A stretch of 64,000 nt of DNA from Histomonas meleagridis 2922-C6/04-290x (GCA_020184695.1 JAANOX010000253.1:310001-374000), one strand, 5' to 3'. Positions 38,212 through 64,000 are shown, counted from the first letter of the stretch. Made by a program: numbers and translations. Notes: a model not told the origin generated them from the letters alone.

Positions 38212-38561
38212 ACACACACACACACAGCGCTATTGAAGCTTCGCGTGATACGCTCGCTTCAAGCCGCGCTACATAAAAGAAAGCATTAACGATAGAGGAT
38301 GATTGAAAATTAGGATTAACGGTCGAGTTTAAAATAAGCATGTGCGAAAAATCTAACTATAACTTGTAACGTAACGTTACCTGTAACTTTGACATTTTGG
38401 AAAAAAGAAGAAGAATAAAGAACATGAGATGCAAAAACCAAGGTTACGTTACGTTACAGGTTATAAATTAAGTCTAGTTTTAAAGTAGTAATTTGATTTT
38501 TTAATGCAACTAAAAAAAGATGTCAAAAGTTACAATCGACATAAACGACAAATTCTGATTA

Positions 38562-39886
38562 ATGGACATTAGAAAAAAAAAAAACTATGATTTAAACGGA
38601 GATGAAGCAATAAATGATTTAAAGAAATGTTTTTTAGTATGTGATTCAACACCTGAAGTATTTATGTTTAAAGATTATGACGCAGTGAATGATTATGTTA
38701 AAGTAAGTTATACATCAGAAAAACGTTGCAAAAACAAAAGCTAAAAAAAATAATTATTGGAAGAAGGACCGAAGGAAATAAAACAAAAAACGTTTCCGCT
38801 TGGGATTTATATTTAGAAAATACAGAAATATTTACGGTAAAAGCATTAAAATTTTATTCCGAAGACCCTCAAATTTTTTCTTACTTTAGAGGTTATGATT
38901 ATAAAAAGCTTGATAAAGTAAAAACAGAAATTATACAACCATTTTTAGATCACGTCAGAGAAGTAATAGCAAATGGTAATGAAGAAATTTATAGATATAT
39001 TTTAATTTGGGTCGCGAGCATTCTTCAAAAACCAAATTTCAAAACTGGAGTTGCTTTAGTTATATTAGGAAATCAAGGAACAGGAAAAAATACATTCTTT
39101 ACAGATGTAATTTGCAAACTTATGGCAAGATACGCAAATGAAAATGTTACGAATATAGAATCAGTAGTCGGTAAATTTAATGCAACAAAAAAAAAAAAAA
39201 AATTACTGGTTTTAAATGAACTACAAAGTATTGATACAAATAAATTTTTAAATTCCGATGCATTAAAATCTATTATAACAGATAAAACAATAAATATAAA
39301 TCAAAAGAATGAACCGATGAGAGAAACAGAAAATGTTGCTAATTTTATAATGGTATCAAATAATGATGTTCCAATAAAGATTGAAAGTTATGATAGAAGA
39401 TATGTTGTAACAAAAACAAGTGATAAGCATTTACAAGATTTCAAATATTTTGCAAATTTAGCGAAAACATTTACACCTGAATTTTATGAAAATTTATTTA
39501 CATTCTTTATGTTAATGGATGTGTCGAAAGTAAATTTAAGAAGAATTCCGAACAGTGAAGCAAAAGAAAATATAAAAGAAGCTTCAATGTCAAGTTATGA
39601 AATTTTCGCTAGAGACAATTACGAAAAAATCAAAAATATAACAGGTCCTGATTTATTTAATTTATATTGTGATTTTATTGAGAAAAATAAATTCAACAGT
39701 TGCAGTTCAAGGACTTTTATTGCAAATATGAAAAAATTCACTGGAAATGCTTCTGCAAAAAGGATTGATGGAAAAGTATTTAAAGTATATAATTTATTGC
39801 CAGAAGTTTATGATAGGTTTGAAAAATATCACAAAAAATTAGAAGAACAAATAGTTGATGATGAAATTGATGATGATGCTTTATGA
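38562..39886 (+). CDS. Poxvirus D5-like SF3 helicase (frameshifted in A-runs near the 5' end)
   Basis: Walker A 'GNQGTGKNTF', 'LVLNEL' and 'NFIMVSNNDVPIKIESYDRRYVV'. ORFs 38562-38744 and 38726-39886 join at a poly-A tract. Confidence 0.88.
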
Positions 39887-40101
39887 AGAATGTTTATTTT
39901 TATCAAAAAGTACCTTTTAATTTTCAAAGATGTTTTTTTAACCCTTTTTCTAACCCTTTTTTTAACCCTTTACGAATCGGAGAAAATGAGCATTTTTTGA
40001 ATGATTTAACGCAAAAGTTGAATGACAAAAATTAAAATATCTCGTTATGTGATAGTTATTTTTATATAATTTACATTTGCCGATGGCAAACTGCGACAAA
40101 G

Positions 40102-40362
40102 TCACATATCAAACGATTTCCTTTCGTTTGTAGTCTTCGCCTGAAGGCTCGATGCTCGCGTGTGCTCGCTTCCCGGGAAAGTTATTTTTAAGCCTTCAAA
40201 CTCTTTTGAAAACGTGATATTTTCATTTCCAACGTAAGCATTTAATGATATAATTTTATTGTCAATTTCTTCTCGTTTCTCGACTAATTCGTCAGTGATT
40301 CGTTTTACGATATCATTTCTGGCTTTCATAAATCTATTATTTAATTCTGCAGGAGCAATATT
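40102..40362 (-). pseudogene. 3' part of hypothetical gene 'X' of element A, cut by insertion of element B
   Basis: 'NIAPAELNNRFMKARNDIVK' is shared with 42255-42490. Homology ends exactly at the (AC)7 terminus. Confidence 0.85.
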
Positions 40363-40546
40363 ACACACACACACACAGCGCTATGTGAGCTTCGTGCTAC
40401 GCACTCGCTCCCACCCGCGCTACATAAACTAAAGGATGAACGGTGTAAACGCGATTGATTTTCATAAATCGGTTGGTTTTGATTGAAAGTAATTAAATAT
40501 ATTTAAATTCATGATGACATTTATTTTTTAAATGTGTGAGGCATGA
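40363..40546 (+). repeat. Left TIR of element B (~184 bp, starts (AC)7AGCGCT)
   Basis: Reverse complement of 60553-60734 with only a few mismatches. Confidence 0.95.
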
Positions 40547-40858
40547 CAAACTAACTAACTAACTAACTAACTAAAAAAGTTATTAGCTAAAGGAAATTCG
40601 GAAAAGCTGAATGAGTTTCTCCATTTTTAGTGATTTGACGTGAATATTGCATGTTTACTGGAGCTGATGATGATAACGGATGAGTTGTCGTTAATGCTAT
40701 GTGGAAAGTTGTGTTTTCATTATTTTTTAACACGACAAACTAACTAACTAACTAACTAACTAAAAAAGTTATTAGCTAAAGGAAATTCGGAAAAGCTGAA
40801 TGAGTTTCTCCATTTTAGTGATTTGACGTGAATATTGCATGTTTACTGGAGCTGATGA
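40545..40858 (+). repeat. Tandem sub-terminal module (~190-bp period) with (CTAA)6 and TAGCTAAAGGAAATT motif
   Basis: Near-identical units begin at ~40545 and ~40734. Confidence 0.9.
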
Positions 40859-40875
40859 AAAATAAAGCTTGCATT

Positions 40876-41957
40876 TTACTGTTTCTTTGTGTAATATGTG
40901 GTTCTTTTTTTCCTTTTCTTAAAATCGATCTTTTATCAAAGTGATTTTTAGTGTTATTCATCATTGAAAAGCTCCTTGTTGAAACGTTAGTGTTGAAGTA
41001 ATTGTTAAACATAGAACACAATTCAGAAACTTCTATTTCTTCATTCGGAATAGTTTTTAAGAAATTCTCAAAAGTTGGTTTTGAATCTTGAATTACAATT
41101 ATTGAATCACTCTCTACATCTTCATCTACTTCCTCAACTAAAGGATCGGTAGATTTTTGTATATTATAATAATTTAATGCACCGGCAAATGATTTAGTTG
41201 CTATTAAATCTTCTTTTAGATAATTAACTCTTTCTGTAAATTCTTCATTCAAAAGTTCAGGAAGTGTATCAGTCAATGATTCATTCAAACGAAACATTAA
41301 AGTTTCAGCATAAGTTTTTCACAAGTTTTGAATTTGACATCGCATGAGCGTCAGGAATAATATTTATTTGTTTTTTGATGAAATTCGATATAAACAGATA
41401 CATAATATCAATTAATCTATTAAATTTATTCTTAAATGTTGTTTCAATTAACATAAATTCAGAAGTTTTATTATTCTTGACCGAAAGAGTTATTGTAGTT
41501 AAAGCATTAATTAATCTTTGCGAAAATTTATCAAGAATTTGCATCGCTCGCTTACCGTTTTTATTTAAATATACGCTTTCAATTGTTTTAGAATAATCTT
41601 TATCTTTCGGACAAATGTTTTTTTCTTTATTCACGAAATAAAAATTTCTGAAAATTTTCTGCTTTCTTCATATCTGATTCAATTAATTCAATTTCATTTT
41701 TGCAATTAGATATATATTGATCTTTGAGCATATCAGATGTTATAAATTCATTTTTAGATTTAAATATTTCACCCGGTATGTGTTGAATGTTATAATAAAT
41801 TTGATTTATCATCTTTTCATATTCTTCTTTAGTATATTCTTTATGAAGATAATAATTTCTTTTTGCTTTCTTGCTGATGTTCAAGAACAAATTTATTGAT
41901 TTTTCTGTTAATGTATTTATTACTTTGTTCTTCTGATGTAAAATTAACAATCGCCAT
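40876..41957 (-). pseudogene. Hypothetical gene 'W', left copy (C-terminal winged-helix-like region; frameshifts and internal deletion)
   Basis: High similarity to 58875-60120 on the opposite strand, e.g. 'KNICPKDKDYSKTIESVY.NKNGKRAMQILDKFSQ'. Confidence 0.75.
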
Positions 41958-42254
41958 TTAGCTCTTTTATATACAAATTAAAAATCAAAAACTACTTTAA
42001 AATTAAACTTAATTTCATTTGTGAGTTTAGTCGAGTAAATCATCAATTTTCAAGTGATTTCACATGAATGGAGAAACTCACGGAACAATTTTGAATTTCC
42101 TTTAGCTAGTTTCTTTTTTAGTTAGTTAGTTAGTTAGTTTGTCATGTATAAAAATAAATGTTAATATCAGTTTTGCTTTTCAAAAAATTCTCTTTCAATT
42201 TCTGACTGTTATTTTCACATGATTCACATTTGCCGATGGCAAACTGCGACAAAG

Positions 42255-42750
42255 TCACATATCAAACGATTTCTTATTGTTTGTATTTTTTGGAAAAGTT
42301 ATTTTTTCTTCTTCAAACTCTATTGAAATTGCTATATTTTGATTACCAATATATGCATTTAATGATATAATTCTATTATCGATTTCTTCACGTTTCTCAA
42401 CAAGTTCGTTTGTGATCTTCTTGACAATATCATTTCTGGCTTTCATAAATCTATTATTTAATTCTGCAGGAGCAATATTTACAAGTTTCTTTTCATTTGT
42501 TTTTAGTAAGAATGTTATCAGTAAACTTTAAATTTACTGATTCAAGAAGTTTTAAATTCTTATCATAAAATTTAACGCCTACAAGAATATTATTATGAAG
42601 TATAGGTTTATTTGTTGGTTTGTCTATCTTCACTGTTGTATTATGATTATATTTAAAATCAACAGCGGCGTAAGGCGTCTTGCCGGAGCAAGACTTGTCT
42701 TGCGACTTAATTTTATATTCTGATATTAAATAATCTTGGAATGAATCCAT
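42255..42750 (-). CDS. Hypothetical element gene 'X' (~165 aa after removing one A at ~42503)
   Basis: ORFs 42493-42750 and 42255-42490 become continuous with a 1-nt correction in an A-run. A paralogous 3' half lies at 40102. Confidence 0.6.
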
Positions 42751-42790
42751 TTATTAACGGTAAAAAATTTATTTTTATAAATAAAAAATA

Positions 42791-43690
42791 ATGCGAAAAA
42801 ATAATTCGGAGAATATAGATAAAAAATTTGATGAGATAGAAGAATTGTTTGATAAATTAGAAAAACAAAACAAAGAAATTTTAGAGAATGCAAAGATAAA
42901 ACCAATACATGAAAAATTCTTATTTGCTCAAAACGGAATAACAGCATTTATAGCGCCGATGGGTTCAGGCAAATCATATCTTTACGTTAAACTTGGAGCG
43001 AAACAAGAAGTATTATTTAACGAACCGTTTTTTGAATTAATAACTATTTGTAGTACATCCTCAAAATTTGATGAAACAGTAAATACTTATAAGGAAGCAA
43101 TAAAGAAAACGAAACTTGTTGCGATAAAAGATACTGATTTGTTAGACTGGATTAATAAATATATTCGGAGAATTTTAAAATATAATTCTATCATTAAATA
43201 TATCAATTCTGATTTTAAGAAAACGGATGAAGAAGTAGAAAGATTATTTATGAAATATAATTTGAATAACTCAAAGAAGAAATTAAAATACATTTCTGAA
43301 AAGTTAGCGAAATATCAATGGAAAACTTATCCGCATAGATGTTTGTTGATATTAGATGATTTTGCTAATCATCCTTTGCTGAGAAGTAAAGAAACGGAGA
43401 TGTCAAGATTATTGAAAAAACTCAGACACTTTAATATTAACGTTATCATTTGTGTGCAAACAACAAAAAGTATACCAAAAGATATAAAAAGAACTTTGTC
43501 AGATATTGTATTATTTAATGGTATTGGACAAGAAGACTTCTTCGATCTGTTGAAGGAATCACCAGCGAGTGTTTTTGACGCAAAAGCTTTATGGAAAGAA
43601 TATAGCAAAATGAAAGACCCACACGGTACGTTTAGTATTCACATTAAAGCACGAAGAGTTATTATAAATCAAAAAATAAAAGAATCTTAA
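42791..43690 (+). CDS. DNA-packaging ATPase (A32/FtsK-HerA superfamily)
   Basis: Walker A 'APMGSGKS', Walker B 'LLILDDF' and 'LRHFNINVIICVQ' (R...Q motif). Confidence 0.9.
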   Translation: MRKNNSENIDKKFDEIEELFDKLEKQNKEILENAKIKPIHEKFLFAQNGITAFIAPMGSGKSYLYVKLGAKQEVLFNEPFFELITICSTSSKFDETVNTYKEAIKKTKLVAIKDTDLLDWINKYIRRILKYNSIIKYINSDFKKTDEEVERLFMKYNLNNSKKKLKYISEKLAKYQWKTYPHRCLLILDDFANHPLLRSKETEMSRLLKKLRHFNINVIICVQTTKSIPKDIKRTLSDIVLFNGIGQEDFFDLLKESPASVFDAKALWKEYSKMKDPHGTFSIHIKARRVIINQKIKES

Positions 43691-43758
43691 GATTCGGAAA
43701 CAATGTTTCATAAAAAAATGAAAGAATCTTAAGATTCGGAAACAATGTTTCATAAAAA

Positions 43759-44517
43759 TTATTTTTGATTTTGAATCTCACCAACAAATAAATCTTCATC
43801 TGGCATTCCTTGAACAGAAATTGTTATATACATTGGATTCAGTAAATGTACTTCGTGAAGGTTTGCGTCAACGAGTGTCAACTGTATATGTGACAAATCA
43901 TTAGAATTTATGTCAATTTCAAAATCAGCGTTTGATACAATAATCGGAAAATTTGCCGAAAAAGAGTTATTGATTCTAAGAACGATTTTTGAAATGTTAA
44001 TGGTTTCGTTTAAATTTCTATAAGAACTTTTTCCAACATTCGACAAAAGATATAATACTGGAGTTGATAAAGTATTTCCGACTGATTCAGCGAATATTTC
44101 AAATGTATCTGTACCATTAAATGTTGATGGTATAGGAAGAATTTGTGAGTATAATCCTGATATTTGAATTATATTATATGAAGCATTATTTATTGTAAAG
44201 GCATTTGAAGAAGTAAATACAATTCTACCGGCTTCGTCGACTTCAGACGTAACGCCTGATTCTTGAATTAAAGAATTCAACAGTAATATAAACGTTTGTG
44301 AGTTTAAGTCAGTGTAATCATTATTGAAATAGTATTTTTTACCGTTAATCTGTATAAAATCATCTTTCTCAATAACAACAATAGAACATTTAGTCGTTAG
44401 CGACGTTACAATCATTTTTGCTTGACGTGTTGGCGGTGACGGTAAGTTTACGTCAATTCTATTGTAATGTTCAGCGTCGTAGGAAGAAATTGTATAATCA
44501 ATTACTGCATTATACAT
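43759..44517 (-). CDS. Probable minor capsid (penton, single jelly-roll) protein
   Basis: 252 aa, beta-rich, next to the ATPase. The C-terminus 'LSHIQLTLVDANLHEVHLLNPMYITISV' resembles Polinton/virophage penton ends. Confidence 0.55.
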   Translation of the reverse strand: MYNAVIDYTISSYDAEHYNRIDVNLPSPPTRQAKMIVTSLTTKCSIVVIEKDDFIQINGKKYYFNNDYTDLNSQTFILLLNSLIQESGVTSEVDEAGRIVFTSSNAFTINNASYNIIQISGLYSQILPIPSTFNGTDTFEIFAESVGNTLSTPVLYLLSNVGKSSYRNLNETINISKIVLRINNSFSANFPIIVSNADFEIDINSNDLSHIQLTLVDANLHEVHLLNPMYITISVQGMPDEDLFVGEIQNQK

Positions 44518-44557
44518 TTTATATATTGTAAAAATTTATGAATAACATATATAAAAA

Positions 44558-44716
44558 ATTCAAGGGTTAAAAAATCACAAAAAGTTAACCTTTCAGTAAC
44601 TGAAGCAAACATGCAATATTCATGTCAGATCACCCGAAAAACGCTAATTTACTCGGATTCGTAAAAGGTTAAAAAAAAGTGATTTTTTAACCTTTGATTT
44701 TTAAAAGGTACTTTTT
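44558..44716 (-). repeat. Intergenic repeat module (copy of family also at 39906, 52759, 54100, 54310, 55070, 60957)
   Basis: Core 'aaaagtacc...taaccc..acgaa.cggag.aaatgagcattttt...gatttgac.tgaatattgcatgttt'. This copy is bounded by ~20-bp inverted repeats. Confidence 0.85.
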
Positions 44717-44892
44717 GAATATTTTTATTTAATTAAAATGTCGTTTGTTGGCGTTTGGTTGTGTGTTATTGGAACCATTTATGTTTTAAATTCAATCGTA
44801 AATACAATGATAAAAATATATGTTGTATTTAACGAAGAGGAAGAAGAAGATAAAAAGGAATTACCCGAAGATATTAAAAGGTCACTTTACTC

Positions 44893-45663
44893 TTAAAGTA
44901 CAACAGTTTTTCTGTAATTATAAAGAAATACTAATTGAATAATAAACCTGCAATATTTCGGATAAATATTATTTTTACCGTTTGTTGTAAATCTAATGTT
45001 AAATGTTGAGCCATCAGTTGGCGCGTTATATAATACAGTAGGTTTTTCATAAAAATCACCTTTGATGCCAATGAATCGTCTCTTCGAATCACTAAATGAA
45101 GCATGAAATTCTAAATACTCTCTGTTCCAAACATTATTAAAAGTCATTACTTCCTTTTGAGTTGACAAATAACTTATACTTTCTGACGTTACATCTTGAT
45201 TTAAGAATTTCAAAAAACTTTCTAAATTAGATGTAGTAGTTCCTGAATCAACAATCGCAAATTTTGCGACAAGATTCTGAGTTTCATCCGAACCAACATA
45301 AGTACAAGCAAAATATAAATTGCCTGAGTTTTCGTATTCGTAAGATAATCTATAACTCGCAAATGAATTATTAAAACTATTACAAATTGACGTTAAAATT
45401 TCAAATAAAGTATTTTGTGCCATAACTTGAATTTTAATGATACGTGGATTAGGTGAAGAACCACTGACGCTTTCAGGTTTAGTTACTTCAAACTGTAATG
45501 AGAAAACGTGAGCGGTCGGCGTTATATCTAATCTTCTTATGCCAATAGCTTTATTCTGTGACGGAGACTCTAACCAACGTTGAGGATAACGGAAAGTATA
45601 ACCATTTTGAGGATTTAATACTTCATACTTATCTAAATCAAGATTTGTATAATTTTTCTTCAA
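44893..45663 (-). CDS. Hypothetical beta-rich protein, possible second minor capsid protein
   Basis: Intact 256-aa ORF of alternating beta-strand-like segments in the structural gene cluster. Confidence 0.4.
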   Translation of the reverse strand: MKKNYTNLDLDKYEVLNPQNGYTFRYPQRWLESPSQNKAIGIRRLDITPTAHVFSLQFEVTKPESVSGSSPNPRIIKIQVMAQNTLFEILTSICNSFNNSFASYRLSYEYENSGNLYFACTYVGSDETQNLVAKFAIVDSGTTTSNLESFLKFLNQDVTSESISYLSTQKEVMTFNNVWNREYLEFHASFSDSKRRFIGIKGDFYEKPTVLYNAPTDGSTFNIRFTTNGKNNIYPKYCRFIIQLVFLYNYRKTVVL

Positions 45664-45728
45664 TCGGTAACTGAGACGCAGTTGTTGTAAATTGATTTTC
45701 AGTTTTATACATTTTTATCTTATTAAAA

Positions 45729-48700
45729 ATGTCAAATTCACAGTTTGAAAAAATTGAAAATATAGTAAGAGCATTAATGAATAAAAACAGTGTTGTATAC
45801 AGTAATCATTCAAAAACATCTGATACATTATCAAATGGTATATGTACATTACAGATAAATAGTTATGACAAATCATTTGTTTTCACTTACGGAAGAAATC
45901 ATGTTGTAATATCACCGTTAGATAATAGCATAAAAAATGAAAAGTATATCAATAATAATATTAAAGTTGATGATATACTTACTGGAGAAAATATAATGAA
46001 AAATGCATATATAATTGAAATGTTCGGTAATATAAATAAAGTATTGGATTTATATAAACAATTTGTAAAAATCAATGAAGATAGTAATAATGTTTCAATT
46101 ACAAATTTAATTATTGATACCATTAATGGTTATTCAACAGATGATTTTGCATTAAAAAATCATACACATGAAATTATTAATAATGATTTAGCTATTAATG
46201 GAAGTTTAGTTGCAAATTCCATTAACGGATATTATATTTCAAACAGTATTGGCGGAGGTTCTAATTCAACAGTAAATATTCCATCAATCGCGACTATTAA
46301 ATCAGATGGAGTCATGGAAGTCGGTGAGTATATTGATTTTCATTATAGAGATGATTATAATAAAGATAATACGTGGAGAATTAGAGCAATAACCGATACA
46401 TTAAGTTTTCAAGCAAAAAGGTGGAAGTACAATTAGTTTTAATAATAACGGTAATATAACAGTAAATAGTATTAATGGTATTTCTACAAATGATATATCA
46501 CTAACGACGCATAATCACGACGACAAATACTCTCCGTTAAATCATATTCATAGTGATTATCTAACTAATGCTAACTTAGAAAGTATTAATCATAAATTAA
46601 CAGGAATATATTATAATGAAGAAACAATTACTAATGAGGAAGAAGAGGATATTACTGAAAAATATACTTTAATAAATCAAGATCTTATAGTTAATGGTAC
46701 GATTAATGATATTAACACAGAAGAAATAGCTTTAGTTCGAGACGGAATTTTATCTACCGGAGACGTTATATCATTTGAAAACGGAGTCAGTATATCAACT
46801 TATGATAATACTACTTATGAAGGAATTACTGAAAATAATTTATTAATAATTTTTCCTAATGGTAATAGTATCATGTTAGAGGATAGCGGACATACTTATG
46901 GTATAATTAATAATGATGGAGAATTAAAAACAGAATACTATTTAACAAAACAAATGATCATTGATGATGAAGACATACAAGAAATTTTAATGGGACCTCC
47001 AGGAGAAGACGGTGAATCCACATATAAAGAAAGTTTTTTTGATAGTATATTTGATATAATAGATACTTTTTTTACAGCTGCTGATACAGCATATACTATA
47101 GCTCAAATTGTAAGTCAAATAAAAATTTTGGGTGGGCAGGATTTTTATATAATAGTTTTGGGATTAATGTTATGAAGTCAAAAGGTTATTTACCGTTACC
47201 ATCATTGAAATCAGTAGTTTTTGATGAATATGATATATCGACAGGTGGAATGTTGGAAGATTTAGAAGTTCCAAACGCTGAAGATATTGACCAAGAATTT
47301 AATGAATATAATTATTTAATAAATCTATTCCCAGAAATGAATATTATATTTAAAAATTTGAAGTATTATTATAAAGATGTTTCTAAAGGTCAAAGAACAA
47401 ATGAATTAGGTCTTTTATTAGTCGATTGTCAGATATATAAACGTTTCGTTAATCATAAACATGATAATTATTTAATAGCTGCTGATTTAAATAATTATAC
47501 AGGAATAACTTATCATAAAGATTTATTAGAAACTAATGAAGAGGAGGAAGAAATATATGAAATCTACACGTCAATTAATCAAGATTTAAAGGTTAATGGA
47601 TCGCTGATCTCCGATAGCTTTAGCTGTCGTGGTAATGTTGAATGTTCTACTATTAATGGTATTGATTTAGATGAATTATCTGTTATCAGTAATGATATAT
47701 TTAATATTAACAATAAATTAACAGGTATTACTTTTAATAAAGATTATGTCGAAACAAATGAAGAAGAAGATATTTATGAAATTTACACGTCAATTAATCA
47801 AGATTTAAAAATAAATGGTAATATAGAATGTACAACTATTAATGGTATTGATACTAATAACTTTTCTTTAACAAATCATACTCACAATCAATATTTAACT
47901 AATGATAATTTAACTGATATAAATAAGGGTTTTAACAGGAATATCATATAATGAATATGGCGATTGGACTAAGATTAAACATGATTTATTAGTAGGTAAT
48001 GATATTTCATGTAGAATATTGACAGCAAGTCGTAATATCAATATTGATTGTAGTAAATATTCAGATGATACAAATATTTATAAAGGATTGTTTATTCATA
48101 GAACTAATGCAATGCCGGGTGATTCTATTAGAATGGAAATAGGTGTATTGCCTAATGGAGATGATTGTAGCGTAATAGAACATTACGTAGGTTCTGATGA
48201 TAATATTGATACTTGTCTAAGATTCAAAGTTTGTGATGGCAATTATGTAAGTATATATAAAAATGGTAATATTAGTTGTAATAGTATTAATGGAATTGAT
48301 ACTAATAATATTTCATTAACAACACATAATCATGATGATAAATATTCTTTATTAAATCATAATCATACAGAATTTAATAATGCTATTACTATTAATGGTG
48401 AACTTATTGTAAATAGTGATATATTTATTGATGGTAATATAAATTGTATTTCTATTAATAATATTTCTGTTGGTAATTTCTCATTAAAAAATCATACTCA
48501 TGATACTATTGATAATGATTTAAATGTTAATGGTAATTTATATTGTGAAACAATTAATGGAAAAATACCTGAAGAATTCTCATTAAAATATCATAATCAT
48601 GACGAAAGATATTCTTTAACAACACATAATCATGATGATAAATACTCTTCGTTAAATCATACTCATAATGAATACTCTTCGTTAAATCACACACATGAAA

Positions 48701-52374: not shown

Positions 52375-52409
52375 TTTAAGTGATAAAAAATTATTTTTAC
52401 TGTTATTAA

Positions 52410-52760: not shown

Positions 52761-52968
52761 AAAGTACCATTTATTTTTTGAGGGTTAAAAATAACCTAAA
52801 AGTGAACCCTCAACGAAACGGAGGAAATGAGCATTTTTCGGATGATTTGACGCGAATATTGCATGTTTGCTCGAGTTACTGAAAGGTAAACTTTTAGGTT
52901 AACTTTAACCCTTGAATTTTAAAAGTGCTTTTTTCAGAAATAATACATTAAACGAATCAATAATATTT

Positions 52969-54080: not shown

Positions 54081-54081
54081 A

Positions 54082-54440: not shown

Positions 54441-54447
54441 ATTATTT

Positions 54448-55557: not shown

Positions 55558-56338
55558 TAATTCATATTGGGTCTGTGCGCGCATTTCATTTGCATTCTTA
55601 TAATCTGCTGATTTTTGAACTTGCCGTAAAGTTTCATTTTTCATTCTTTACTTTTTCTAACTCACGTTGCAAGCTACTTTTAATTCGCATTTGTTCATTA
55701 GCTTCTATTTCATGTTGGCGTTCAATAGTAAGCATTTTTGCTTCAGCTAATTGAGCTTGAATTGTTGCGTTTTGATCTTTTAATAAATCAATGTCGCCTT
55801 TATACTGAGTTTTTTTAAGTTCTGCCAAAGCTTTTTCGTAACGTTCAGTTTCTTGTTGAGCTTTGTTTGCTAATTCATGCTGACGTTCAATCTCTCTTTC
55901 TGCCATTTCACGTTTTTGCTTTTCTTCGTTATACTTTGCCTCAGCAGCTTTTGTTGCTTTTTTCATATTTCTTTCTTGTTCATCCAAATTTTTCTTTTTT
56001 CTTGCTAATTCATCTTGTTTCTCTCTTCGCGTATCATTAATTTGTTGTTGACGAACATCGTTTTGATTTCTCATATTATGTATTGCGTCAAGATTAATAT
56101 TTTGTGGAGTTTGTGATAAAGCAACAGGAAGAAATGGATTTTGTAAATTTGCCATCATCTGTGACCTAGCAGAATTGGAATTTTGATTATTCGGTGAAGG
56201 AAGAATATTTGCTCTAACACTAGCGTTTGGGTTAATTGTTGGAGCTTGAGTAATTAGTCGATTCGCGTGCGAACTTTGCGATAGCAAATGCCTTAATCCG
56301 CGTTTAACATTTTTCTTTGTTTTTCTCTTGCTCGTCAT
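55558..56338 (-). pseudogene. Coiled-coil gene 'Z' of element B with basic N-terminus, 3'-truncated
   Basis: Nearly identical to 63507-64000. Homology stops at ~55558. Confidence 0.75.
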
Positions 56339-56813
56339 TTCTTGTTTGTTCGACCGAAGGAATTTCCTCAGCATCAATATAAATATCATTCTTTAAACTT
56401 CTGTATTTCTTCTTAAGCTTTTTATGCTTACCTGTTAATTTATCTAATCGTGAATTTAATTCAATTATATGCTCCATTAATAATTGGTCATTTGATAAAT
56501 AAACTTTACCGTCGTTGTTGTTTTTTTAATTACTTTTTTTGACTAACCGTTGGAGTTTTTTTGATTTCTTTGCTGTAACTCTAGCGTTACCGTTCTTGAA
56601 AAATTTGACGTCAAAAAATTCATTTTCAATTCCTTTTTTAGCATTAGCAATTATAATTTCTTTTTCTTCTTGTGTTAAATCTTTTACTGCTTTCTTTGTT
56701 ATCTTAACATCAGATGTTTTTTCTTCATCAACGTTTTCCTCATCCAAAACAATTTCTGTTTCGCTCCGAAGGAGCTCAGGCTCGTAGAGCCGTTCAGTCT
56801 CGTTCTCTGCCAT
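56304..56813 (-). pseudogene. Hypothetical element gene 'V' (frameshifted)
   Basis: 'MAENETERLYE...' continues in another frame as 'KVYLSNDQLLMEHIIELNSRLDKL..KHKKLKKKY'. Confidence 0.55.
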
Positions 56814-56958
56814 TTATTAAATATAAAAAAATCAAAAAATCATTTAATGAATCACATTAATCCAGGAATCATTACTCTTGGTTGAGGTTTCATTACCGCA
56901 GGTTTCATTTGATATCTTTGTTGCTTACCTAAATTTTTGTTCGTGTTCGATCCATTGT

Positions 56959-57321
56959 TTAAATTTTATCGCCTGCTTGAATCCACGGTTGAGTTTTATC
57001 CGAAATCTTTTGACCTGTGTCTAAAACACGTTCGGCTACTTCTTTGCCTTTTATCTACGGCTCGTTTAATTTTTGTCTTTAATCTTACCGTCAGGAACTG
57101 CATCAACTATTTTTATCTATTTTTATCTGTTATATCTCCTTTACGCTTTCTTACTGTATCAATTATTCCTGGAATCTTTTTTTACCAAATTCAATTCCTC
57201 GACTGATTATTGGCGAGACCTTACCGTAAATTCTCTTTCCTTTATCAATACCATTTCTTACAAGTCGTCCTGCATTTTGAATAATTTTTCTTATTCCACC
57301 GAATATACGACCTAATCCCAT
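56959..57321 (-). CDS. Small Gly/Lys/Arg-rich amphipathic protein (not in ORF track; A-run frameshifts)
   Basis: ATG at 57321: 'MGLGRIFGGIRKIIQNAGRLVRNGIDKGKRIYGKVSPIISRGIEFGKK...IVDAVPDGKIKDKIKRAVDKGKEVAE'. Confidence 0.6.
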
Positions 57322-57357
57322 TTAATATAATTAAAAAAACGTTTTAATAACTCTTAA

Positions 57358-58509
57358 ATGAGTCTAAACGTTAATAGAGAAATTGACAAAACACATTTTA
57401 AAACTTACAGTCACGTTAAAAAACACGTGCAAAATAAATTTCCAAATGTTAGTGAAAAGAAAATTAAAAAAGTAATATCAAGGAGATTGAAGGATAAATT
57501 TATTAAAACAAAAGATATAAAACCTTATATGATAAAAATATTTTCAACTGTTCCAAATTGTTGGTTTCATGATTTATATGATAATGGAAAAAATAAAAAT
57601 CCTCGTTATTGGCATGTGTTTATTGGCACAAATAATAGATACGTTTATTGTCTGCCGTTAATGTCAAAATCAGCGTCTGCTGTTCATGAAACATTAAAAC
57701 AATTCATTGTCAAATTCCATCCTGTAAAATTAACGTCAGATGAAGAACCAGCATTTATTGAAAAATAATTTAAAACTTCTTTCTAAAAATAAAGTTGCCG
57801 TTCATACTATATCAGACAAAAACCATTCGTCTTTAGGCATTATTGATAGATTCATGCGAACAATAAGAGATATGAATACTCCAACGGAAAAATCTAAACA
57901 TCAATCACATGATGAAAAATACACACATTTATTACTCCAGAAAGAATCAAACAGTTTCTGTATACGTACAACAATACTTACCATTCAGCCATCGGTTGTT
58001 CTCCAAAAGAAATGTTTGATAAAAAAAAAAAAAAAAAAGAATATATATTTAAATGTTTAGAATCTTCTGAAAAACAAAAATGTATTAAGAATTTAATTCT
58101 TCCTGTTGGCTCTTTTGTACGCTATATATTACCGCGTCATAATGGCATAACTAAAAAAAGATTTCAAATAAGTCGTGAATGTTATAAAATTGATGAACGG
58201 AAAGGAAACATATACGTTTTAATTGCTCAAGACGGAACAGTAATTACTAAACCAAGATACAAACTAATACCTATTGGTAAGAATAAACCAAATAATATTA
58301 AATGGGCGTCAACTATTCCTGGTAAATGGGTTGGTTCTGTTGAGTCAATTTTATCATTTAATCCAAAAACGAGTAAGTATAAAGTACTTTTTACTGTTCC
58401 TGGAAAACGTTCATATCAAGATGAAATTCCTGCATCATTTCTCCGCGGTAATACTCCACATAAACAATCAGAAATTGAAAAAGAATTTTTTAAAAATAAA
58501 CGGACATGA
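57358..58509 (+). CDS. Retroviral-type (rve) integrase with C-terminal chromodomain-like region (two A-run frameshifts)
   Basis: 'WFHDL', 'LTSDEEPAF', 'SSLGIIDRFMRTIRDM' and C-terminal 'VESILSFNPKTSKYKVLF'. Confidence 0.88.
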
Positions 58510-58874
58510 CAAACTAACTAACTAACTAACTTAACAAAAAAATTTTGGAGAAAGAGTTTTCATAAATGGCAGTTTCTGGCAATCATCAATTTTCAACTTA
58601 GCGATTTGAGCTGAATTTTGCATGTTTACTGCTGCTGCTAACGATTAATTGACCGAAGAATTTTCTAATGCTACCTGATAACTTGATATACCAGGTAGTT
58701 ACCAGGTAATATTGCGATTAGCTAAAGGAAATTCAAAATTGTTCTGTGAGTTTCTCCGTTCATGCGAAATCACTTGAAAATCAAGAGTTTGCAGCAGTAA
58801 ATGCCAAAATGAAATTAAGATTAATTTTAAGAGTAGTTTTTTTATTTTTTTAACAAGTATAAAAAGAAGCGAAC

Positions 58875-60120
58875 ATGAGCATTGTTAATTTTACATGCAC
58901 AAAAGATCCAAAAACATGTATTGTTACTTATAAAACCGAAGAACAAATTCAAAAATACATTGACGGCAAAATTAATAAATATGTTGCTGAGCATAAAGAA
59001 GAAGTAAAAAAAGAACTTATTATTTAAAGAAAGAACACACGAAGGAAGATTATGATAAGATTTTAGATGAGATAGAATATAATATGCATCACATCCCGGA
59101 GAAATGGCTAAAACCTGAAAATGAATTTATAACGGAAGATATGATCAAAGAACAATATAAAAAACAAGCTCAAGAAGAATATCAACTTGTTTTAAATGAC
59201 ATGAAAAAAGCTGAAAACTTCCAGAAATTTTTAATTCAAGAAAGAAAGAAATTAGAAAAATATCCTCGTTGTAATCAAAAACGTCATTGACAATGTGACA
59301 GAATACATAAACCAAGCCGTTAATTATTACCATCAAGATTTAATTGATGTGAATTTCGAATTGTTCGTAAATGAAGTAAAAAACATTTGTCCGAAGGATA
59401 AAGATTATTCCAAAACAATTGAAAGCGTTTATATAAACAAGAATGGAAAGCGAGCGATGCAAATTCTTGATAAATTTTCACAAAAATTAATTAATGCTTT
59501 AACTACAATTACATTTACGGTAAAAAATAATAAAACTTCTGAATTTATGCTAATTGAAACAGTACTGAAAAATAAATTCAATAGATTAATTGATATTATG
59601 TATATGTTTATATCAAATTACATCAAAAAACAAATAGACATTATTCCTGACGCTCATGAAATGTCGAATTCAAAATTAGTAAAAACATATGCTGAAACTT
59701 TAATGTTTCGTTTAAATGAATCACTCACAGAAAATCTTCCTGAACTTCTTGAACGAAGAATTTAAGGAAAGAGTTAATTATCTCAAAGAAGATTTAATAG
59801 CAACTAAATCATTTGCCGGAGCATTAAATTATGAAGATAAACAAAAACCAACGGATCCATTAGTTGAAGAGGTTGAGGAAGATATAGATAATAATTCAGT
59901 AATTGTAATTCAAGATTCAAAACCAACGTTTGAGAATTTCTTAAAAACTCTTCCGGAAAATAAAATTGAAGTAAAAGAATTATGCTCAATGTATAATAAT
60001 TATTTTAACACTAACGTTTCAACAATAGGATTTGGAAAATTGAAAAATGTAAAAGATAATTTAACAAAAATTATTACTGTATCAAGAAATAAGAAAACTA
60101 CATATTATCAGAAGATTTAA
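58875..60120 (+). pseudogene. Hypothetical gene 'W', right copy (frameshifted)
   Basis: ORFs 59084, 59295 and 59716 are pieces of one gene. It is an inverted paralog of 40876-41957. Confidence 0.75.
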
Positions 60121-60149
60121 GGCTTTTATTAAAGTTTATTTTTGTCATT

Positions 60150-60550
60150 TACTCCCGTAAACTCACGATTTTCACGTCATTTCACAAGATTTGAGAAACT
60201 CACATAACAATATTAAATTTCCTTTAGCTAATCGCAATATTACCTGGTAACTACCTGGTATATCAAGTTATCAGGTAGCATAGAATTAACATCAAAATAC
60301 TAAAATCCACATAGGATTAACATCAAAACACAACATTCGACATAGAATTTACAACTCATCCGTTATAGTTAGCAGCTCCCGTAAACTCACGATTTTTCAC
60401 GTCATTTCACAAGATTTGAGAAACTCACATAACAATATTAAATTTCCTTTAGCTAATCGCAATATTACCTGGTAACTACCTGGTATATCAAGTTATCAGG
60501 TAGCATAGAATTTACAACTTTCCACATAGTATTAACAACAACTCAGCCGG
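60150..60550 (-). repeat. Tandem sub-terminal modules (inverted relative to 58670-58790)
   Basis: 'gagaaactcacataacaatattaaatttcctttagctaatcgcaatattacctggtaactacctggtatatcaagttatcaggtagca' occurs at ~60193 and ~60418. Confidence 0.9.
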
Positions 60551-60552
60551 AT

Positions 60553-60734
60553 TCATGCATCACACATTTTAAATATAAATGTCATCATGAATTTAAATAT
60601 ATTTAATTACTTTCAATCAAAACCAACCGATTTATGAAAATCAATCGCGTTTACACCGTTCATCCTTTAGTTTATGTAGCGCGAGTGGGAGCGAGTGCGT
60701 AGCACGAAGCTCACATAGCGCTGTGTGTGTGTGT
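60553..60734 (-). repeat. Right TIR of element B (ends AGCGCT(GT)6)
   Basis: Reverse complement of 40363-40546. Confidence 0.95.
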
Positions 60735-60957
60735 TAAATATGTAATTGCTGTACGTCCTGAAATGTTTAAAAGAGCGAAACGCTTCGGTTTGGAATCATT
60801 ATATAATGTCTATTGTGGAATTAATGTTAAGATTTATGAACCAATACCAAATACTGCAAAAGGAAGATTCATACTTTTATGGAATCCCGGCAATTGTGAA
60901 ATTACAGTTGCTGATGGTGAAGACGAATTACCAAATAATTTTGGCGTTAAATGTTAA
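60735..60957 (+). pseudogene. 3' part of gene 'Y' of element A, cut at the right TIR of B
   Basis: 'KYVIAVRPEMFK...' is homologous to 52541-52760 and starts exactly after (GT)6. Confidence 0.85.
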
Positions 60958-61161
60958 AAAGTACCATTTATTTTTTGAGGGTTAAAAAAATAAAAAAATG
61001 AACCCTTTTTCTAACCCTCAACGAAACGGATAAAATGAGCATTTTTCGGATGATTTGACATGAATATTGCATGTTTGCTCGAGTTACTGAAAGGTTAACT
61101 TTTTTGTGATTTTTTAACCTTCAAAAATAAATGATACATTAAACAATTCAAACTAAAAATC

Positions 61162-62776
61162 TTAGCGAGCCATTCCTGCTACAAGTTGCTCGATGCTTGC
61201 GTTGGTAATTTCAATTTGACTTCTACCGTCAGGCTTCATTGCTCTAACTTTCAATAATGCGTCTTCAAAGTATATTCCTGTTGGTGCGATATACGTTACA
61301 TTTTTCATTGCGGTATTAGCTAATCTATCTCCGAATAATTCAATCTGAACTGTTCCAGTGGTTGATATTCCACCCATGAAGTCCTCACCTTCAGCGAACG
61401 GTAATCCTATGAAGAAATTAGAATTATCTTTACCATGCCAAGCTCTTGTTTGAGTATTAACGCCTGAAGCATTATATGTGTTCTTGTAATAATACGGTTG
61501 AACTGACGTTTTAATATCTTTTGCTAATGAACTCAAAAGACTTCCATTAAGATTTACAGCATCAAGTAACATATTAAGATTTCTTGGGTCATCAACGGTT
61601 TCATATGCTTCTCTCGGATAAATTTTACCGTCAATATTAAAACTATATCTTATTTGTGGATTCAAGAAGCATGTCCGTGAATATTGACTTTGTCTGAATA
61701 CAGTAAACATAGTATCACAATGTTTAAGTCCTATTGTTGCTGCTGTGTTAAATGATGTTGGAGCACTTGTTGAATTACTTCCGAGTGGTTGTGTGAAATC
61801 TCTTACTTGACAAACGTGAATTGGAAATAGCATCGGAACTTGAATATATTTTGCAGCAAGAGCATTAAACACATCCATTTTCAAAAGATATGTTGCAAGC
61901 TTAATTTTAACATCTTTTGTAACTTGACTGTTGCAAATGAATTTTTGAGGTGCATCCATTGTTGCGTAAGTTGTTGAACCGCTTCCTGCTGTTGCTTTAA
62001 TGTTGCTCTTTACTGATTCATTAACATTTCTAAATCCAAGGTCGCATAAATAATCTCCTTCAACTACAGCTTTTGCAGCAACTAATGATTCATGATCGCA
62101 TACAGGAGCAATAACAATATTTTTATATGAAGGCATCAGTTCGATTGAAAGCTTGCCGCTCCAGTTAGGATAATATCGCATATTAAATAACATTAAGAAA
62201 TAACTTATTGGAATCCTTAATGGAATCTTAACTATAACTTCTTTTTGCTGAGGTAATAGCGCTAAAGTCACAGTAAACGCCAGGAACCATTGAATCATGA
62301 GCTCTGATTTTATCAATAGTTGCGAAACAATCATTACCGGCTTTAGCTTCATCAGATAATGAATTAGAAAGCATGAACCATTCATACCTTGCGTTATGAA
62401 CGTCTTGAATTTTATCTGTGTTTGAATAAATTCTGTATTGGTCTATAGCATCGCATGAACATTTATAACCGACATAATATTCTTTAAACAAAAGATTTGA
62501 TTGTGACGGAACGGTAATTGGTACTTCTTGTTCTAAAGTAATATATGAATTATCTAAACCAATAATCTTAAATCTATCCGTGAAAATGTCAACGTATGTT
62601 GTGTCTCCCTCGTTTATGTCTCCAACATTGCCGTAAGAAGTAGCTGTCGTGTATTCATAATTTCCCGGAATGATTTCAGAAGCTTTAACTGCTTCATCAA
62701 CTTCATTATACCAATCTTGAAGGTTTCCAGTCATTGCATCAATAACATTTGGCTGTTGATTTTGTGGTGCAAACAT
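61162..62776 (-). CDS. Major capsid protein (putative double jelly-roll), ~537 aa after removing one A at ~62242
   Basis: Two ORFs join if T5 at 62242-46 is read as T4, as in the B copy. Size, beta-rich content and C-terminus 'FFIGLPF...GGISTTGTVQIEL...PTGIYFEDALL' fit a Polinton MCP. Confidence 0.7.
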
Positions 62777-62948
62777 TTTATAGTGATAAAAAAATCAAAA
62801 CATCAATTAGAATCTAAGTCTTCAATCGTTACTGTATTTGTTAACGGTAACAATCTTCTATTAGAAAAAGTTCTTAAATCATTATAAAAATTGAAGTAGT
62901 AAATCAGGAGCTAATTGACTTTTATTTGTTCTAGTAAATCCAGCATAT

Positions 62949-64000
62949 TTATGTTGATTTTTCTGCTAAAAATTGATTAAATCTATCATCTCCAATTGAA
63001 TTAATCAAAGCATCAATATTATATTCAAGTTGTATTCTTTGATTATTTTGATTTACAACTTGTTGTGCAATATCTGATTGTAATTGATTTGTTATTGCTA
63101 ATTTTCTTGTCGGTGATAGATTACCGCTAAACATTTGTTGTTGTATTTCAATTTGTGCTTGACTTTCCATTGCTTTTTTTGTATACTCATTCGCTAACTC
63201 AACATCTTGAGCTCTTCTTTGATTTTGTAACGTTGCTATTTTCAAATTTGTATTTTTCTGTATTTGTGCTTTATGTTCGGCAGAATTTAAATATTCTAAT
63301 TCAGCATCAAGAGCTATTTTTTTTTTTCTTCGGTTGCTTGTAATTCCTCTCTTCTTTTAATTTTCTTTTTCACGTTCCTTTGTTTGAACTTTTTTCTTAG
63401 CGTTCTGAACAATCGATTCTTTGTGCGTCTTGCTTATTTCTGGTTTTTGTCCAACGGCTGTTTGATATGCTCATTTTTTAATAGTTCATTTTCATAACGT
63501 GCTCTTTCTAATTCATATTGTGTCTGTGCTCGCATTTCATTTGCATTCTTATAATCTTCTGATTTTAAAACTTTCTGTAAAGTTTCATTTTCATTCTTTA
63601 CTTTTTCTAACTCACGTTGCAAGCTATTTTTAATTCGCATTTGTTCATTAGCTTCTATTTCATGTTGGCGTTCAATAGTAAGCATTTTTGCTTCAGCTAA
63701 TTGAGCTTGAATTGTTGCGTTTTGATCTTTTAATAAATCAATGTCGCCTTTATACTGAGTTTTTTTAAGTTCTGCCAAAGCTTTTGCGTAACGTTTAGTT
63801 TCTTGTTGAGCTTTGTTTGCTAATTCATGCTGACGTTCAATCTCTCTTTCTGCCATTTCACGTTTTTGCTTTTCTTCGTTATACTTTGCCTCAGCAGCTT
63901 TTGTTGCTTTTTTCATATTTCTTTCTTGTTCATCCAAATTTTTCTTTCTTGCTAATTCATCTTGTTTCTCTCTTCGCGTATCATTAATTTGTTGTTGACG
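62949..64000 (-). pseudogene. Coiled-coil gene 'Z' of element A (frameshifted; 5' end outside window)
   Basis: ORFs 63434-63937 and 62949-63245 are pieces of one gene, homologous to 55558-56060. Confidence 0.7.

What the first reader, a model, noticed from the sequence alone, without database searches (positions are those of the whole stretch)
38212..64000. Polinton nested inside a related Polinton, with mismatched flanks that exactly replace the missing module
Seen: element B has matching ~183-bp TIRs (40363/60734), but its flanks share no 5-6-bp target-site duplication (left AATATT, right TAAATA). The left flank is a cut copy of gene X and the right flank a cut copy of gene Y. Inside B, X and Y lie ~10 kb apart with ATPase, penton and fibre between them. 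So A reads D5-X|...|Y-MCP-Z, colinear with B, and has lost precisely the X-to-Y structural block at the site where B sits. Inference: either two B copies inserted into X and Y and recombined, or B caused an adjacent deletion. The result is a composite in which A supplies the helicase and full MCP and B supplies ATPase, penton, fibre and integrase, i.e. possibly complementing defective proviruses.
Basis: partly seen in the sequence, partly recalled or inferred. Interest (0 to 1): 0.8.

Follow-up and report, generated by a model that had tools for sequence, protein, structure and literature searches.

The report
Nested decayed virus-like elements in Histomonas
A 20-kb degenerate virus-like element sits between cut pieces of a related element in the genome of the poultry parasite Histomonas meleagridis; the junctions are as described, but this looks like ordinary recombination (or assembly collapse) among repeated elements, not two proviruses that complement each other.

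Summary
B (40363-60734) has 182-189-nt terminal inverted repeats at 97-98% identity and no target-site duplication (AATATT / TAAATA). Its left flank is the C-terminal part of gene X. Its right flank is gene Y without its first 44 codons, followed by the capsid gene. Inside B, X and Y lie 10 kb apart.

The window is Histomonas meleagridis JAANOX010000253.1:310001-374000. The elements have a D5-like helicase, A32-type ATPase, double-jelly-roll capsid, penton, fibre and rve-type integrase. No pPolB or protease was found, so they are Polinton-like (PLV-type), not strict Polintons.

Three other Histomonas copies carry an uninterrupted Y at the right junction point, so X and Y are not natural neighbours.

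I reached A's right end 5 kb beyond the window. A also lacks a duplication, and its two termini are of different subtypes.

B is a mosaic with unlike arms, and both of its junctions are base-exact. My best reading is two B-like insertions reduced to one hybrid copy by homologous recombination. Assembly collapse is a serious rival, because the ONT reads were probably shorter than B.

Complementation is not supported. A's helicase and capsid genes are broken, and so are B's capsid gene, integrase and fibre.

The parts
38212..38291 (+). Left terminus of outer element A (T_A): (AC)7 then about 65 nt
   Evidence: 80% identical to B's terminus over 80 nt only. 95% identical to the terminus of L022 over 78 nt.
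38520..39886 (+). A: D5-like SF3 helicase gene (DUF5906 / VapE-like), broken
   Evidence: Pfam DUF5906 E=3e-20. 81-85% identical to the intact 455-aa P0001. At least 1 frame change plus 1-2 in-frame stops.
39903..40040 (.). About 120-nt intergenic unit with three 12-nt TTTTT(C/T)TAACCC repeats
   Evidence: 91-94% identical to B 54102-54219 and 54308-54445. Also present in L022 4142-4391.
40102..40362 (-). A: X', the C-terminal remnant of gene X, cut at B's left end
   Evidence: Covers residues about 80-127 of the 135-aa X of L011. Homology with B 42208-42479 stops at 40362.
40363..60734 (.). Element B, 20,372 bp, TIR-bounded, no TSD, no D5 gene
40363..40546 (+). B left terminal inverted repeat
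   Evidence: 97-98% identical to 60553-60734.
40547..42210 (-). B left arm (alpha) with three short ORFs of unknown function and (CTAA)n sub-repeats
   Evidence: 96.5% identical to the L019 arm and 95% to A's right arm, but only 77% to B's own right arm.
42255..42750 (-). B: gene X, full extent but split
   Evidence: Matches residues 1-127 of the 135-aa X of L011. At least 1 frame change.
42791..43690 (+). B: A32-type packaging ATPase, open
   Evidence: Pfam Pox_A32 E=6.5e-9. 97% identical to P0113.
43759..44517 (-). B: penton protein, open
   Evidence: AlphaFold model pLDDT 92.6. Foldseek best match is the mavirus penton at E=1e-8, then Sputnik and adenovirus penton bases.
44893..45712 (-). 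B: homologue of L012 orf268, function unknown
   Evidence: Covers residues 1-267. At least 1 frame change.
45729..49790 (+). B: fibre-like gene with internal repeats, broken
   Evidence: Matches the 1223-aa fibre of L012. At least 4 frame changes.
50163..51083 (+). B: DUF3839 protein, open
   Evidence: Pfam DUF3839 E=9e-22.
51255..51644 (+). B: N-terminal remnant of ORF803
   Evidence: Only residues 1-54 of the 803-aa ORF of L012 match. L019 keeps about 2.3 kb of this gene.
51929..52390 (-). B: orf194 homologue, broken
   Evidence: 1 in-frame stop.
52410..52760 (+). B: gene Y, open (116 aa)
   Evidence: Covers all 117 residues of L019's Y.
52969..54081 (-). B: major capsid protein gene lacking its N-terminal third
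   Evidence: Covers residues 168-537 of P0234.
54082..55633 (-). B: HNH_3 endonuclease cassette (ORF 54572-55030) replacing the MCP N-terminus and the Z C-terminus
   Evidence: Pfam HNH_3 E=4.5e-8. A, L019 and L022 have MCP and Z sequence at this position.
55634..56389 (-). B: N-terminal half of coiled-coil gene Z
   Evidence: Matches residues 7-255 of the 586-aa Z of L001.
56328..57321 (-). B: two small genes (homologues of L019 orf210 and orf153), both broken
   Evidence: 1 in-frame stop in the first; at least 5 frame changes in the second.
57358..58509 (+). B: rve-type integrase gene, broken
   Evidence: Homologous to the L001 integrase (weak Pfam rve) and to the L009 rve gene. At least 2 frame changes.
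58542..60552 (+). B right arm (beta'), a diverged inverted copy of the left arm
   Evidence: 77% identical to the left arm.
60553..60734 (-). B right terminal inverted repeat
60735..60954 (+). A: Y', gene Y without its first 44 codons
   Evidence: Covers residues 45-117 of 117. L019, L022 and L018 continue past this point.
61162..62776 (-). A: major capsid protein gene, full length but broken
   Evidence: Covers residues 1-537 of P0234. 1 frame change. The P0234 model is a double jelly roll.
62949..64000 (-). A: gene Z, runs off the window, broken
   Evidence: Matches residues 119-545 of L001's Z. At least 1 frame change. A continues in L021 to its right terminus at L021 3072.

Best explanation
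This region is a cluster of degenerate endogenous Polinton-like (PLV-type, Maverick-related) virus elements in Histomonas meleagridis.

The outer unit A has the left end that relatives also show: an (AC)n terminus followed by a D5-like helicase, then X. Its right part is Y-MCP-Z-integrase-arm-terminus, ending 5 kb beyond the window.

B is a D5-less, heavily decayed relative. Both of B's junctions are base-exact, with complete element ends and no filler. Junctions of that kind are what an integrase makes. However, they lie at two different target sites in A, one upstream of or within X and one inside Y.

The most likely history is as follows. Two B-like copies inserted in the same orientation at those two sites. 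Homologous recombination between them then removed one copy-equivalent together with A's 10-12-kb X-to-Y block. This left one hybrid B that carries the left flank of the first insertion and the right flank of the second.

Shown: the junctions, the truncations, the uninterrupted relatives, the mosaic make-up of B and the decay of the genes. Inferred: the two-insertion history and the recombination step.

Neither copy looks functional, so the composite is a genomic fossil and not a working pair.
For: - The homology of both flanks with uninterrupted X and Y ends exactly at B's termini.
- There is no TSD.
- X and Y are intact genes in relatives (L011 and L012 for X; L019, L022, L018, L001 and L012 for Y).
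- L019 and L022 are 98% identical to A-right and carry the block that A lacks.
- (AC)n-D5(+) as a left end recurs in L003, L010 and L020.
- B is a mosaic relative to L019. Identity is 95-99% over 40363-42210 and 45467-49160, 80-89% over 49560-52360, then alternating.
- B's arms are unlike each other (77%), while three other arms are 95-96.5% alike. A hybrid of two copies would look like this.
- A's two outer ends share a 13-nt inverted sequence just outside them that occurs nowhere else in 72 kb. This ties A-left and A-right to one unit.
- Nested and concatenated Mavericks are documented in trichomonads (PMC12289875). L010 shows another nested insertion.
Against: - Two same-orientation insertions of one element type into one 22-kb host element is improbable unless these elements prefer each other as targets.
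- The mosaic pattern has many switches, so it could predate integration or come from gene conversion or from polishing of repeats.
- B's outermost 182 nt pair best with each other (97.8%), as expected of a single copy.
- A itself has no TSD, and its termini are of different subtypes. The simple picture of one clean host element is therefore not secured.
- No positive control for a 5-6-bp TSD in this family was available to me.
- The ONT reads were sheared and were probably shorter than B, so the linkage of the two junctions to one copy is not verified.
Confidence: 0.35

Rival explanations
1. Assembly collapse in place. The genome really has two near-identical B copies, inserted at X and at Y of one A, with A's X-to-Y block between them. 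The assembler merged them into one copy and dropped the block.
For: The assembly was made with Flye --meta from g-TUBE-sheared ONT reads and polished with Illumina reads by racon (PMC8529796). B is 20.4 kb, probably longer than the reads. Each junction is locally well defined, but nothing I could run links both to one copy. The absence of a TSD and the exact ends are equally expected under this reading.
Against: The authors report high colinearity of two independently assembled strains with no rearrangements within contigs. B looks old and decayed, so two copies would probably have diverged enough to be told apart. This reading needs the same improbable double insertion as the best explanation.
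Confidence: 0.25
2. One-step aberrant insertion. A single B copy entered A with its two ends joined at sites 10-12 kb apart (non-concerted integrase strand transfer, or intramolecular-transposition-like chemistry). A's X-to-Y block was removed in the same event.
For: Only one insertion is needed. The element ends are exact and complete at both junctions, and there is no TSD. B's outermost TIRs pair best with each other.
Against: By established knowledge of rve-type (retroviral-like) integrases, the two ends attack a target a few base pairs apart, and events at distant sites are rare. This reading does not predict B's mosaic make-up or its unlike arms, although these could predate insertion.
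Confidence: 0.15
3. The two flanks belong to different host elements. A-left (terminus-D5-X') and A-right (Y'-MCP...terminus) are pieces of two separate elements. They were joined through ectopic recombination between B-like copies nested in each, or through an assembler path switching between two loci inside a 97-99% identical stretch.
For: A's two termini are different subtypes, 81% identical over 80 nt and unrelated beyond. A has no TSD. X' is only 75-83% like B's X, whereas A-right is 92-97% like B. B shares several-kb stretches at 97-99% with other copies.
Against: The 13-nt inverted sequence just outside both outer ends is unique in 72 kb and absent at other termini. That links the two ends. 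L022 shows that a T_A-type terminus can go with an A-right-like interior. Mixed termini are therefore normal in this recombining family.
Confidence: 0.12
4. X and Y are natural neighbours in A-family elements, and B simply inserted between them.
For: Gene order in this group is very plastic (L001, L009, L012 and T. vaginalis L002 all differ).
Against: X' and Y' are both truncated within coding sequence relative to intact homologues. The closest relatives of A-right carry full Y followed by orf194, ORF803, DUF3839 and fibre. There is no TSD.
Confidence: 0.02

Closest known systems
Maverick/Polinton elements of trichomonads (TvMav of Trichomonas vaginalis, including the recently described Class 3)
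   Same: They are 10-28-kb virus-like DNA elements with TIRs and an rve integrase in a parabasalid host. [quoted passage not shown] T. vaginalis locus L002 carries homologues of the MCP, penton, D5, ATPase, DUF3839 and orf268 genes.
   Different: Canonical Mavericks/Polintons are defined by a protein-primed family B polymerase, and none was found here. D5 identity to T. vaginalis is only 53%. Gene order differs. I could not test which TvMav class L002 belongs to.
Polinton-like viruses and their endogenous copies in protists (Yutin et al. 2015, PMC4642659; Bellas et al. 2023, PMC10120064, 'Metamonada group')
   Same: They have a double-jelly-roll MCP, a penton, an A32-type ATPase, an SF3 or primase-helicase in place of pPolB, and often an integrase and TIRs. 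They are 15-30 kb, multi-copy, and many copies are degraded.
   Different: Histomonas is not named in the text I could read. This lineage has (AC)n termini and long arms carrying ORFs. Its 803-aa ORF has no detectable family.
Mavirus and Sputnik virophages
   Same: They are among the best structural matches for the MCP (mavirus TM 0.51, Sputnik E=1e-12) and the best matches for the penton (mavirus E=1e-8). Mavirus also has an rve integrase and TIRs (my own knowledge).
   Different: No sequence-level match to any solved structure was found for the MCP profile. There is no pPolB and no protease. The host is a parabasalid, and no giant-virus partner is known.
Deletions by homologous recombination between dispersed repeats (solo-LTR formation, Alu-Alu deletions) and transposon 'adjacent deletions'
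   Same: These processes leave one repeat copy flanked by non-matching target sequences, with loss of whatever lay between. The hybrid copy lacks a TSD.
   Different: Here the recombining repeats would be 20-kb virus-like elements nested in a third, related element. The event is inferred from one locus only.

Membership tests
Polinton/Maverick sensu stricto | [quoted passage not shown] | tested here: not met
   No polymerase family hit in any window ORF scanned. No hit among the genes of the intact 18-kb relative L012 either, by precomputed Pfam, my own Pfam scan, PHROGs or a PDB sequence search of ORF803. ORF803 remains unassigned, so a very divergent polymerase is not excluded.
Polinton/Maverick sensu stricto | Retroviral-type (rve) integrase | tested here: met
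   The B gene 57358-58509 is homologous to the L009 gene with Pfam rve and to the L001 integrase, which has a weak rve hit at E=1.8e-4. The window copy is broken, and its pieces give no Pfam hit on their own.
Polinton/Maverick sensu stricto | Adenain/Ulp1-like maturation protease | tested here: inconclusive
   No protease family hit in the ORFs scanned. Several ORFs remain without any assignment.
Polinton/Maverick sensu stricto | TIRs plus a 5-6-bp target-site duplication | tested here: not met
   TIRs are present. No TSD for B (AATATT / TAAATA) and none for A (CTGTGT / CGCTAT). No complete clean copy was available as a positive control.
Polinton-like virus (PLV)-type endogenous element | Double-jelly-roll major capsid protein | tested here: met
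   Model of P0234 (99% identical to the window's copies): pLDDT 78, pTM 0.81. Foldseek matches SGIV, Sputnik, PBCV-1 and mavirus MCPs at E=1e-11 to 1e-13.
Polinton-like virus (PLV)-type endogenous element | Penton (minor capsid) protein | tested here: met
   Model of window 43759-44517: pLDDT 92.6. Best matches are the mavirus, Sputnik and adenovirus pentons.
Polinton-like virus (PLV)-type endogenous element | A32/FtsK-type packaging ATPase | tested here: met
   Pfam Pox_A32 E=6.5e-9.
Polinton-like virus (PLV)-type endogenous element | Replication module other than pPolB (SF3 helicase or primase-helicase) | tested here: met
   D5-like DUF5906/VapE helicase in A and in relatives L001, L003, L009, L010, L012 and L020. 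No primase domain was detected.
Tlr1-type elements (Tetrahymena) | PIF1-like SF1 helicase together with integrase, ATPase and capsid genes | tested here: not met
   The helicase here is SF3 D5-like. The Tlr1 description is taken from PMC4642659.
Simple nested transposon insertion | Host-element sequence contiguous across the insert, bounded by one TSD | tested here: not met
   The flanks correspond to B positions 42479 and 52541, 10 kb apart. There is no TSD.

The most novel reading that the evidence does not exclude
B arrived in a single integrase-catalysed event whose two ends attacked two distant sites in a resident related provirus. The incoming element thereby replaced the resident's whole morphogenesis block. 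Under this reading, superinfection among Polinton-like elements can swap modules directly and so help generate the mosaic genomes seen in this family.
Probability: 0.1. Interest if true: 0.6.

Novelty: new member of a known kind. Interest (0 to 1): 0.3.

Why it matters
The locus documents a family of roughly 20-kb Polinton-like endogenous viruses in Histomonas meleagridis. The genome paper counted interspersed repeats as only 0.23% of the genome. The copies are nested, mosaic and recombining, as in Trichomonas.

As a case study, the locus shows how such elements erode and reshuffle. I saw no evidence of function or of complementation.

Closely related, apparently intact 18-kb genomes occur in many human-gut metagenome assemblies. 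That is probably the more interesting lead.

Tried and rejected
- Exact look-up of ten window ORFs in the protein collection found nothing. The host was identified only later, through MCP homologues.
- tRNA search of the region and of five loci found none.
- X has no detectable homologue next to D5 in L003 or in T. vaginalis L002.
- Pfam, PHROGs and PDB sequence searches gave nothing for ORF803, Z, Y, X, the arm ORFs, orf194, orf268 or the fibre.
- I considered that 40363-69065 is one L019-type element, with B's left arm and A's right arm as its TIRs and a second element's right half recombined in. I rejected this. The three alpha-type arms are equidistant (95.0, 95.9 and 96.5%), B's outermost TIR pairs best with B's own right end, and the flanks AATATT / CGCTAT give no TSD.
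- I rejected NHEJ capture of a linear B. Both ends are complete, and there is no filler or nibbling at either junction.
- My attempt to find the same locus in the sister-strain assembly, using the closest intact MCP (P0370), returned another copy, L022. I therefore have no independent confirmation of the junctions.
- The L001 contig end (an (AC)n...(GT)n mini-element with inverted flanks) could not be interpreted. It may be a metagenome assembly artefact.

Full report
OBSERVATION

A self-comparison of the window shows that B (40363-60734) is bounded by inverted repeats of 189 nt at 97% identity. The outermost 182 nt pair at 97.8%. Both ends begin with an (AC)n run followed by AGCGCTAT. Weaker inverted similarity (70-77%) continues for about 1.7 kb on each side and contains short ORFs and (CTAA)n sub-repeats.

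The six bases outside the ends are AATATT and TAAATA, and no register gives a direct repeat.

The left flank 40055-40362 aligns with B 42208-42479, and the right flank 60735-62275 aligns with B 52541-54081. In both alignments the homology runs to the very base next to B's terminus. A further match, 63509-64000 to B 55558-56053, is 97% identical.

HOST AND LOCUS

The D5-like helicase and the ATPase have hundreds of relatives in gut metagenome contigs and in Trichomonas vaginalis. The capsid gene is 99% identical to annotated Histomonas meleagridis proteins.

Two cluster members, P0355 and P0356, are exactly the window's own two capsid ORFs. Looking one of them up placed the window at GCA_020184695.1, JAANOX010000253.1:310001-374000. 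It also returned 8.1 kb beyond the window's right edge as locus L021, where window position = 72137 minus L021 position. The overlap is identical.

WHAT THE ELEMENTS ARE

- The D5-like SF3 helicase matches Pfam DUF5906.
- The packaging ATPase matches Pfam Pox_A32.
- The 537-aa capsid protein P0234, modelled with 29 relatives, has pLDDT 78. It matches the double-jelly-roll capsid proteins of an iridovirus, Sputnik, PBCV-1 and mavirus.
- The 252-aa penton, modelled with 40 relatives, has pLDDT 92.6. It matches the mavirus, Sputnik and adenovirus pentons.
- The integrase is rve-type by homology to L009 and L001.
- No protein-primed polymerase or maturation protease was detected in the window. None was detected in the compact, fully open 18-kb relative L012 either.

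These are therefore Polinton-like (PLV-type) endogenous elements of the parabasalid group described by Bellas et al. (PMC10120064). They are relatives of the trichomonad Mavericks, which are reported as nested and concatenated (PMC12289875). They are not Polintons in the strict sense.

GENES X AND Y

In the intact relatives L011 (ATPase 89% identical) and L012, X is a single 135-153-aa gene divergent from the ATPase. In B it has its full extent but is split. A keeps only about residues 80-127.

Y is a 112-137-aa gene next to the capsid gene in L001, L012, L018, L019 and L022. B's copy is open, and A's lacks the first 44 codons. Both flanks are thus genuinely cut genes.

UNINTERRUPTED RELATIVES

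L019 and L022, from other loci of the sister-strain assembly, are 98% identical to A-right. L018, another locus of the same assembly as the window, is 95-96% identical.

All three run through the point equivalent to 60735 into the rest of Y and orf194. L019 and L022 continue into ORF803, DUF3839 and the fibre gene, in the same order and orientation as in B. L018 is rearranged beyond orf194.

X and Y are not natural neighbours, and A-type copies do carry the block.

On the other side, an (AC)n terminus 390-580 bp upstream of an inward-reading D5 gene recurs in L003, L010 and L020. A-left is therefore a normal left end.

Gene order among more distant relatives (L001, L009, L012, T. vaginalis L002) varies a great deal.

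A'S RIGHT END

In L021, A continues through the rest of Z, two small genes, an integrase region (94.5% identical to B's) and a 2.6-kb arm. It ends in a (GT)6 terminus at L021 3072, which is 69065 on the window's scale.

That terminus is of B's subtype: 94% identical to B's TIR, but only 81% identical to A's left terminus over 80 nt. The flanks are CTGTGT and CGCTAT, so A has no duplication either.

Against this, a 13-nt sequence directly outside A's left end recurs as its reverse complement 10 nt outside A's right end and nowhere else in 72 kb. That ties the two ends together, and I cannot explain it. L022 shows that an A-type terminus can accompany an A-right-like interior, so mixed termini are not disqualifying.

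To the left of A lies host DNA (kinase, flavodoxin, a TOR-like kinase and others). To the right lies another element's fibre gene.

B IS A MOSAIC

Compared with L019, B is 95-99% identical over its left arm and over 45467-49160. Identity is 80-89% over 49560-52360, 98-99% in parts of the capsid, Z and integrase regions, and 69-89% over its right arm.

B's two arms are 77% alike. B's left arm, A's right arm and L019's arm are 95-96.5% alike.

An HNH endonuclease cassette replaces the capsid N-terminus and the Z C-terminus in B.

STATE OF THE GENES

The counts are lower bounds. Places are deliberately not given.

A:
- D5 has at least 1 frame change and 1-2 in-frame stops.
- The capsid gene has 1 frame change.
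- Z has at least 1 frame change.
- X and Y are truncated.

B:
- X and orf268 have 1 frame change each.
- The fibre gene has at least 4 frame changes.
- ORF803 is reduced to an N-terminal remnant.
- orf194 has 1 stop.
- The capsid gene lacks its N-terminal third.
- Z lacks its C-terminal half.
- Of the two small genes, one has 1 stop and the other at least 5 frame changes.
- The integrase has at least 2 frame changes.
- There is no D5.

Open in B: the ATPase, penton, DUF3839 and Y.

Some frame changes may be uncorrected long-read errors in repeats. Even so, truncations and deletions affect the capsid genes of B and the X and Y genes of A. The idea of a complementing pair has no support.

MECHANISM

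Both junctions have complete element ends and no filler. This argues for integrase-made junctions and against end-joining capture. Because they lie at two target sites, the options are:
- (a) two insertions reduced to one hybrid copy by homologous recombination;
- (b) the same two insertions collapsed by the assembler;
- (c) one aberrant insertion with its ends at distant sites;
- (d) recombination, or an assembler path switch, between B-like copies nested in two different host elements.

B's mosaic make-up and unlike arms favour (a), (b) or (d). The 13-nt link between A's ends favours (a), (b) or (c). The assembly method leaves (b) open, since it used Flye on sheared ONT reads that were probably shorter than B. 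The authors' report of colinearity between the two strain assemblies speaks somewhat for a real structure.

I put (a) first at about 0.35, (b) at 0.25, (c) at 0.15 and (d) at 0.12.

COMPARISON AND NOVELTY

Nested and concatenated Maverick-type elements and recombination among them are known in trichomonads, so this is a new member of a known kind. It does show that Histomonas carries such elements, although its genome paper reports interspersed repeats as only 0.23% of the genome.

SLIP

While reasoning from ORF lists I roughly localised a few of the breaks. None of those places is written in my notes, my scripts' output or this report.

Noticed in passing
L012-L017 (e.g. L012 1-17910): A compact relative of about 18.3 kb, apparently fully open. 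Its genes run from integrase through MCP, ATPase and a 1223-aa fibre to D5. It recurs in many human-gut metagenome assemblies: its ATPase P0137 is indexed in 123 blocks, and the cluster has 236 member sequences. It is probably a virus or endogenous element of a gut parabasalid.
   Followed up: partly
window 54082-55633: An HNH_3 endonuclease cassette has replaced the N-terminal third of B's capsid gene and the C-terminal half of Z. HNH genes also sit next to D5 in L003 and in T. vaginalis L002, which suggests mobile homing-type cassettes within these elements.
   Followed up: partly
window 38199-38211 and L021 3049-3061: A 13-nt sequence just outside A's left end is repeated in inverted orientation 10 nt outside A's right end. 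It is unique in 72 kb. No direct TSD is present. This is unexplained.
   Followed up: partly
window 38045-38100 and 38159-38211: A local 114-bp-period duplication of host sequence lies immediately left of A. Its second copy is interrupted by A's terminus.
   Followed up: no
window 39903-40040, 54102-54219, 54308-54445; L022 4142-4391: A dispersed unit of about 120 nt containing three 12-nt TTTTT(C/T)TAACCC repeats is found after D5 in A, beside the HNH cassette in B, and just inside the terminus of L022.
   Followed up: no
window 9086-10609 and 17445-18972: A 1.5-kb inverted duplication at 98.8% identity lies 7 kb apart and carries a Myb-like DNA-binding gene. It is unrelated to the virus-like elements.
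   Followed up: no
window 36276-36683: A short ORF has a P-element transposase-like (THAP-type) HTH domain, Pfam E=1.2e-6.
   Followed up: no
L001 8811-8881 / 10309-10379 and 10409-10899: In this metagenomic relative the D5 gene is bracketed by 71-nt inverted repeats (97%). It is followed by a roughly 430-bp (AC)n...(GT)n mini-element whose flanks are inverted, not direct. This may be a contig-end artefact.
   Followed up: no
L010 1-563: The left terminus of a D5-bearing element lies about 460 nt downstream of a fragment of another element's ATPase gene. This is a possible second example of nesting among these elements.
   Followed up: no
L021 5-2480 (right of A, outside the window): Another element's fibre gene lies on the opposite strand, starting about 540 bp from A's right end. 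The locus is therefore a cluster of at least three elements.
   Followed up: partly
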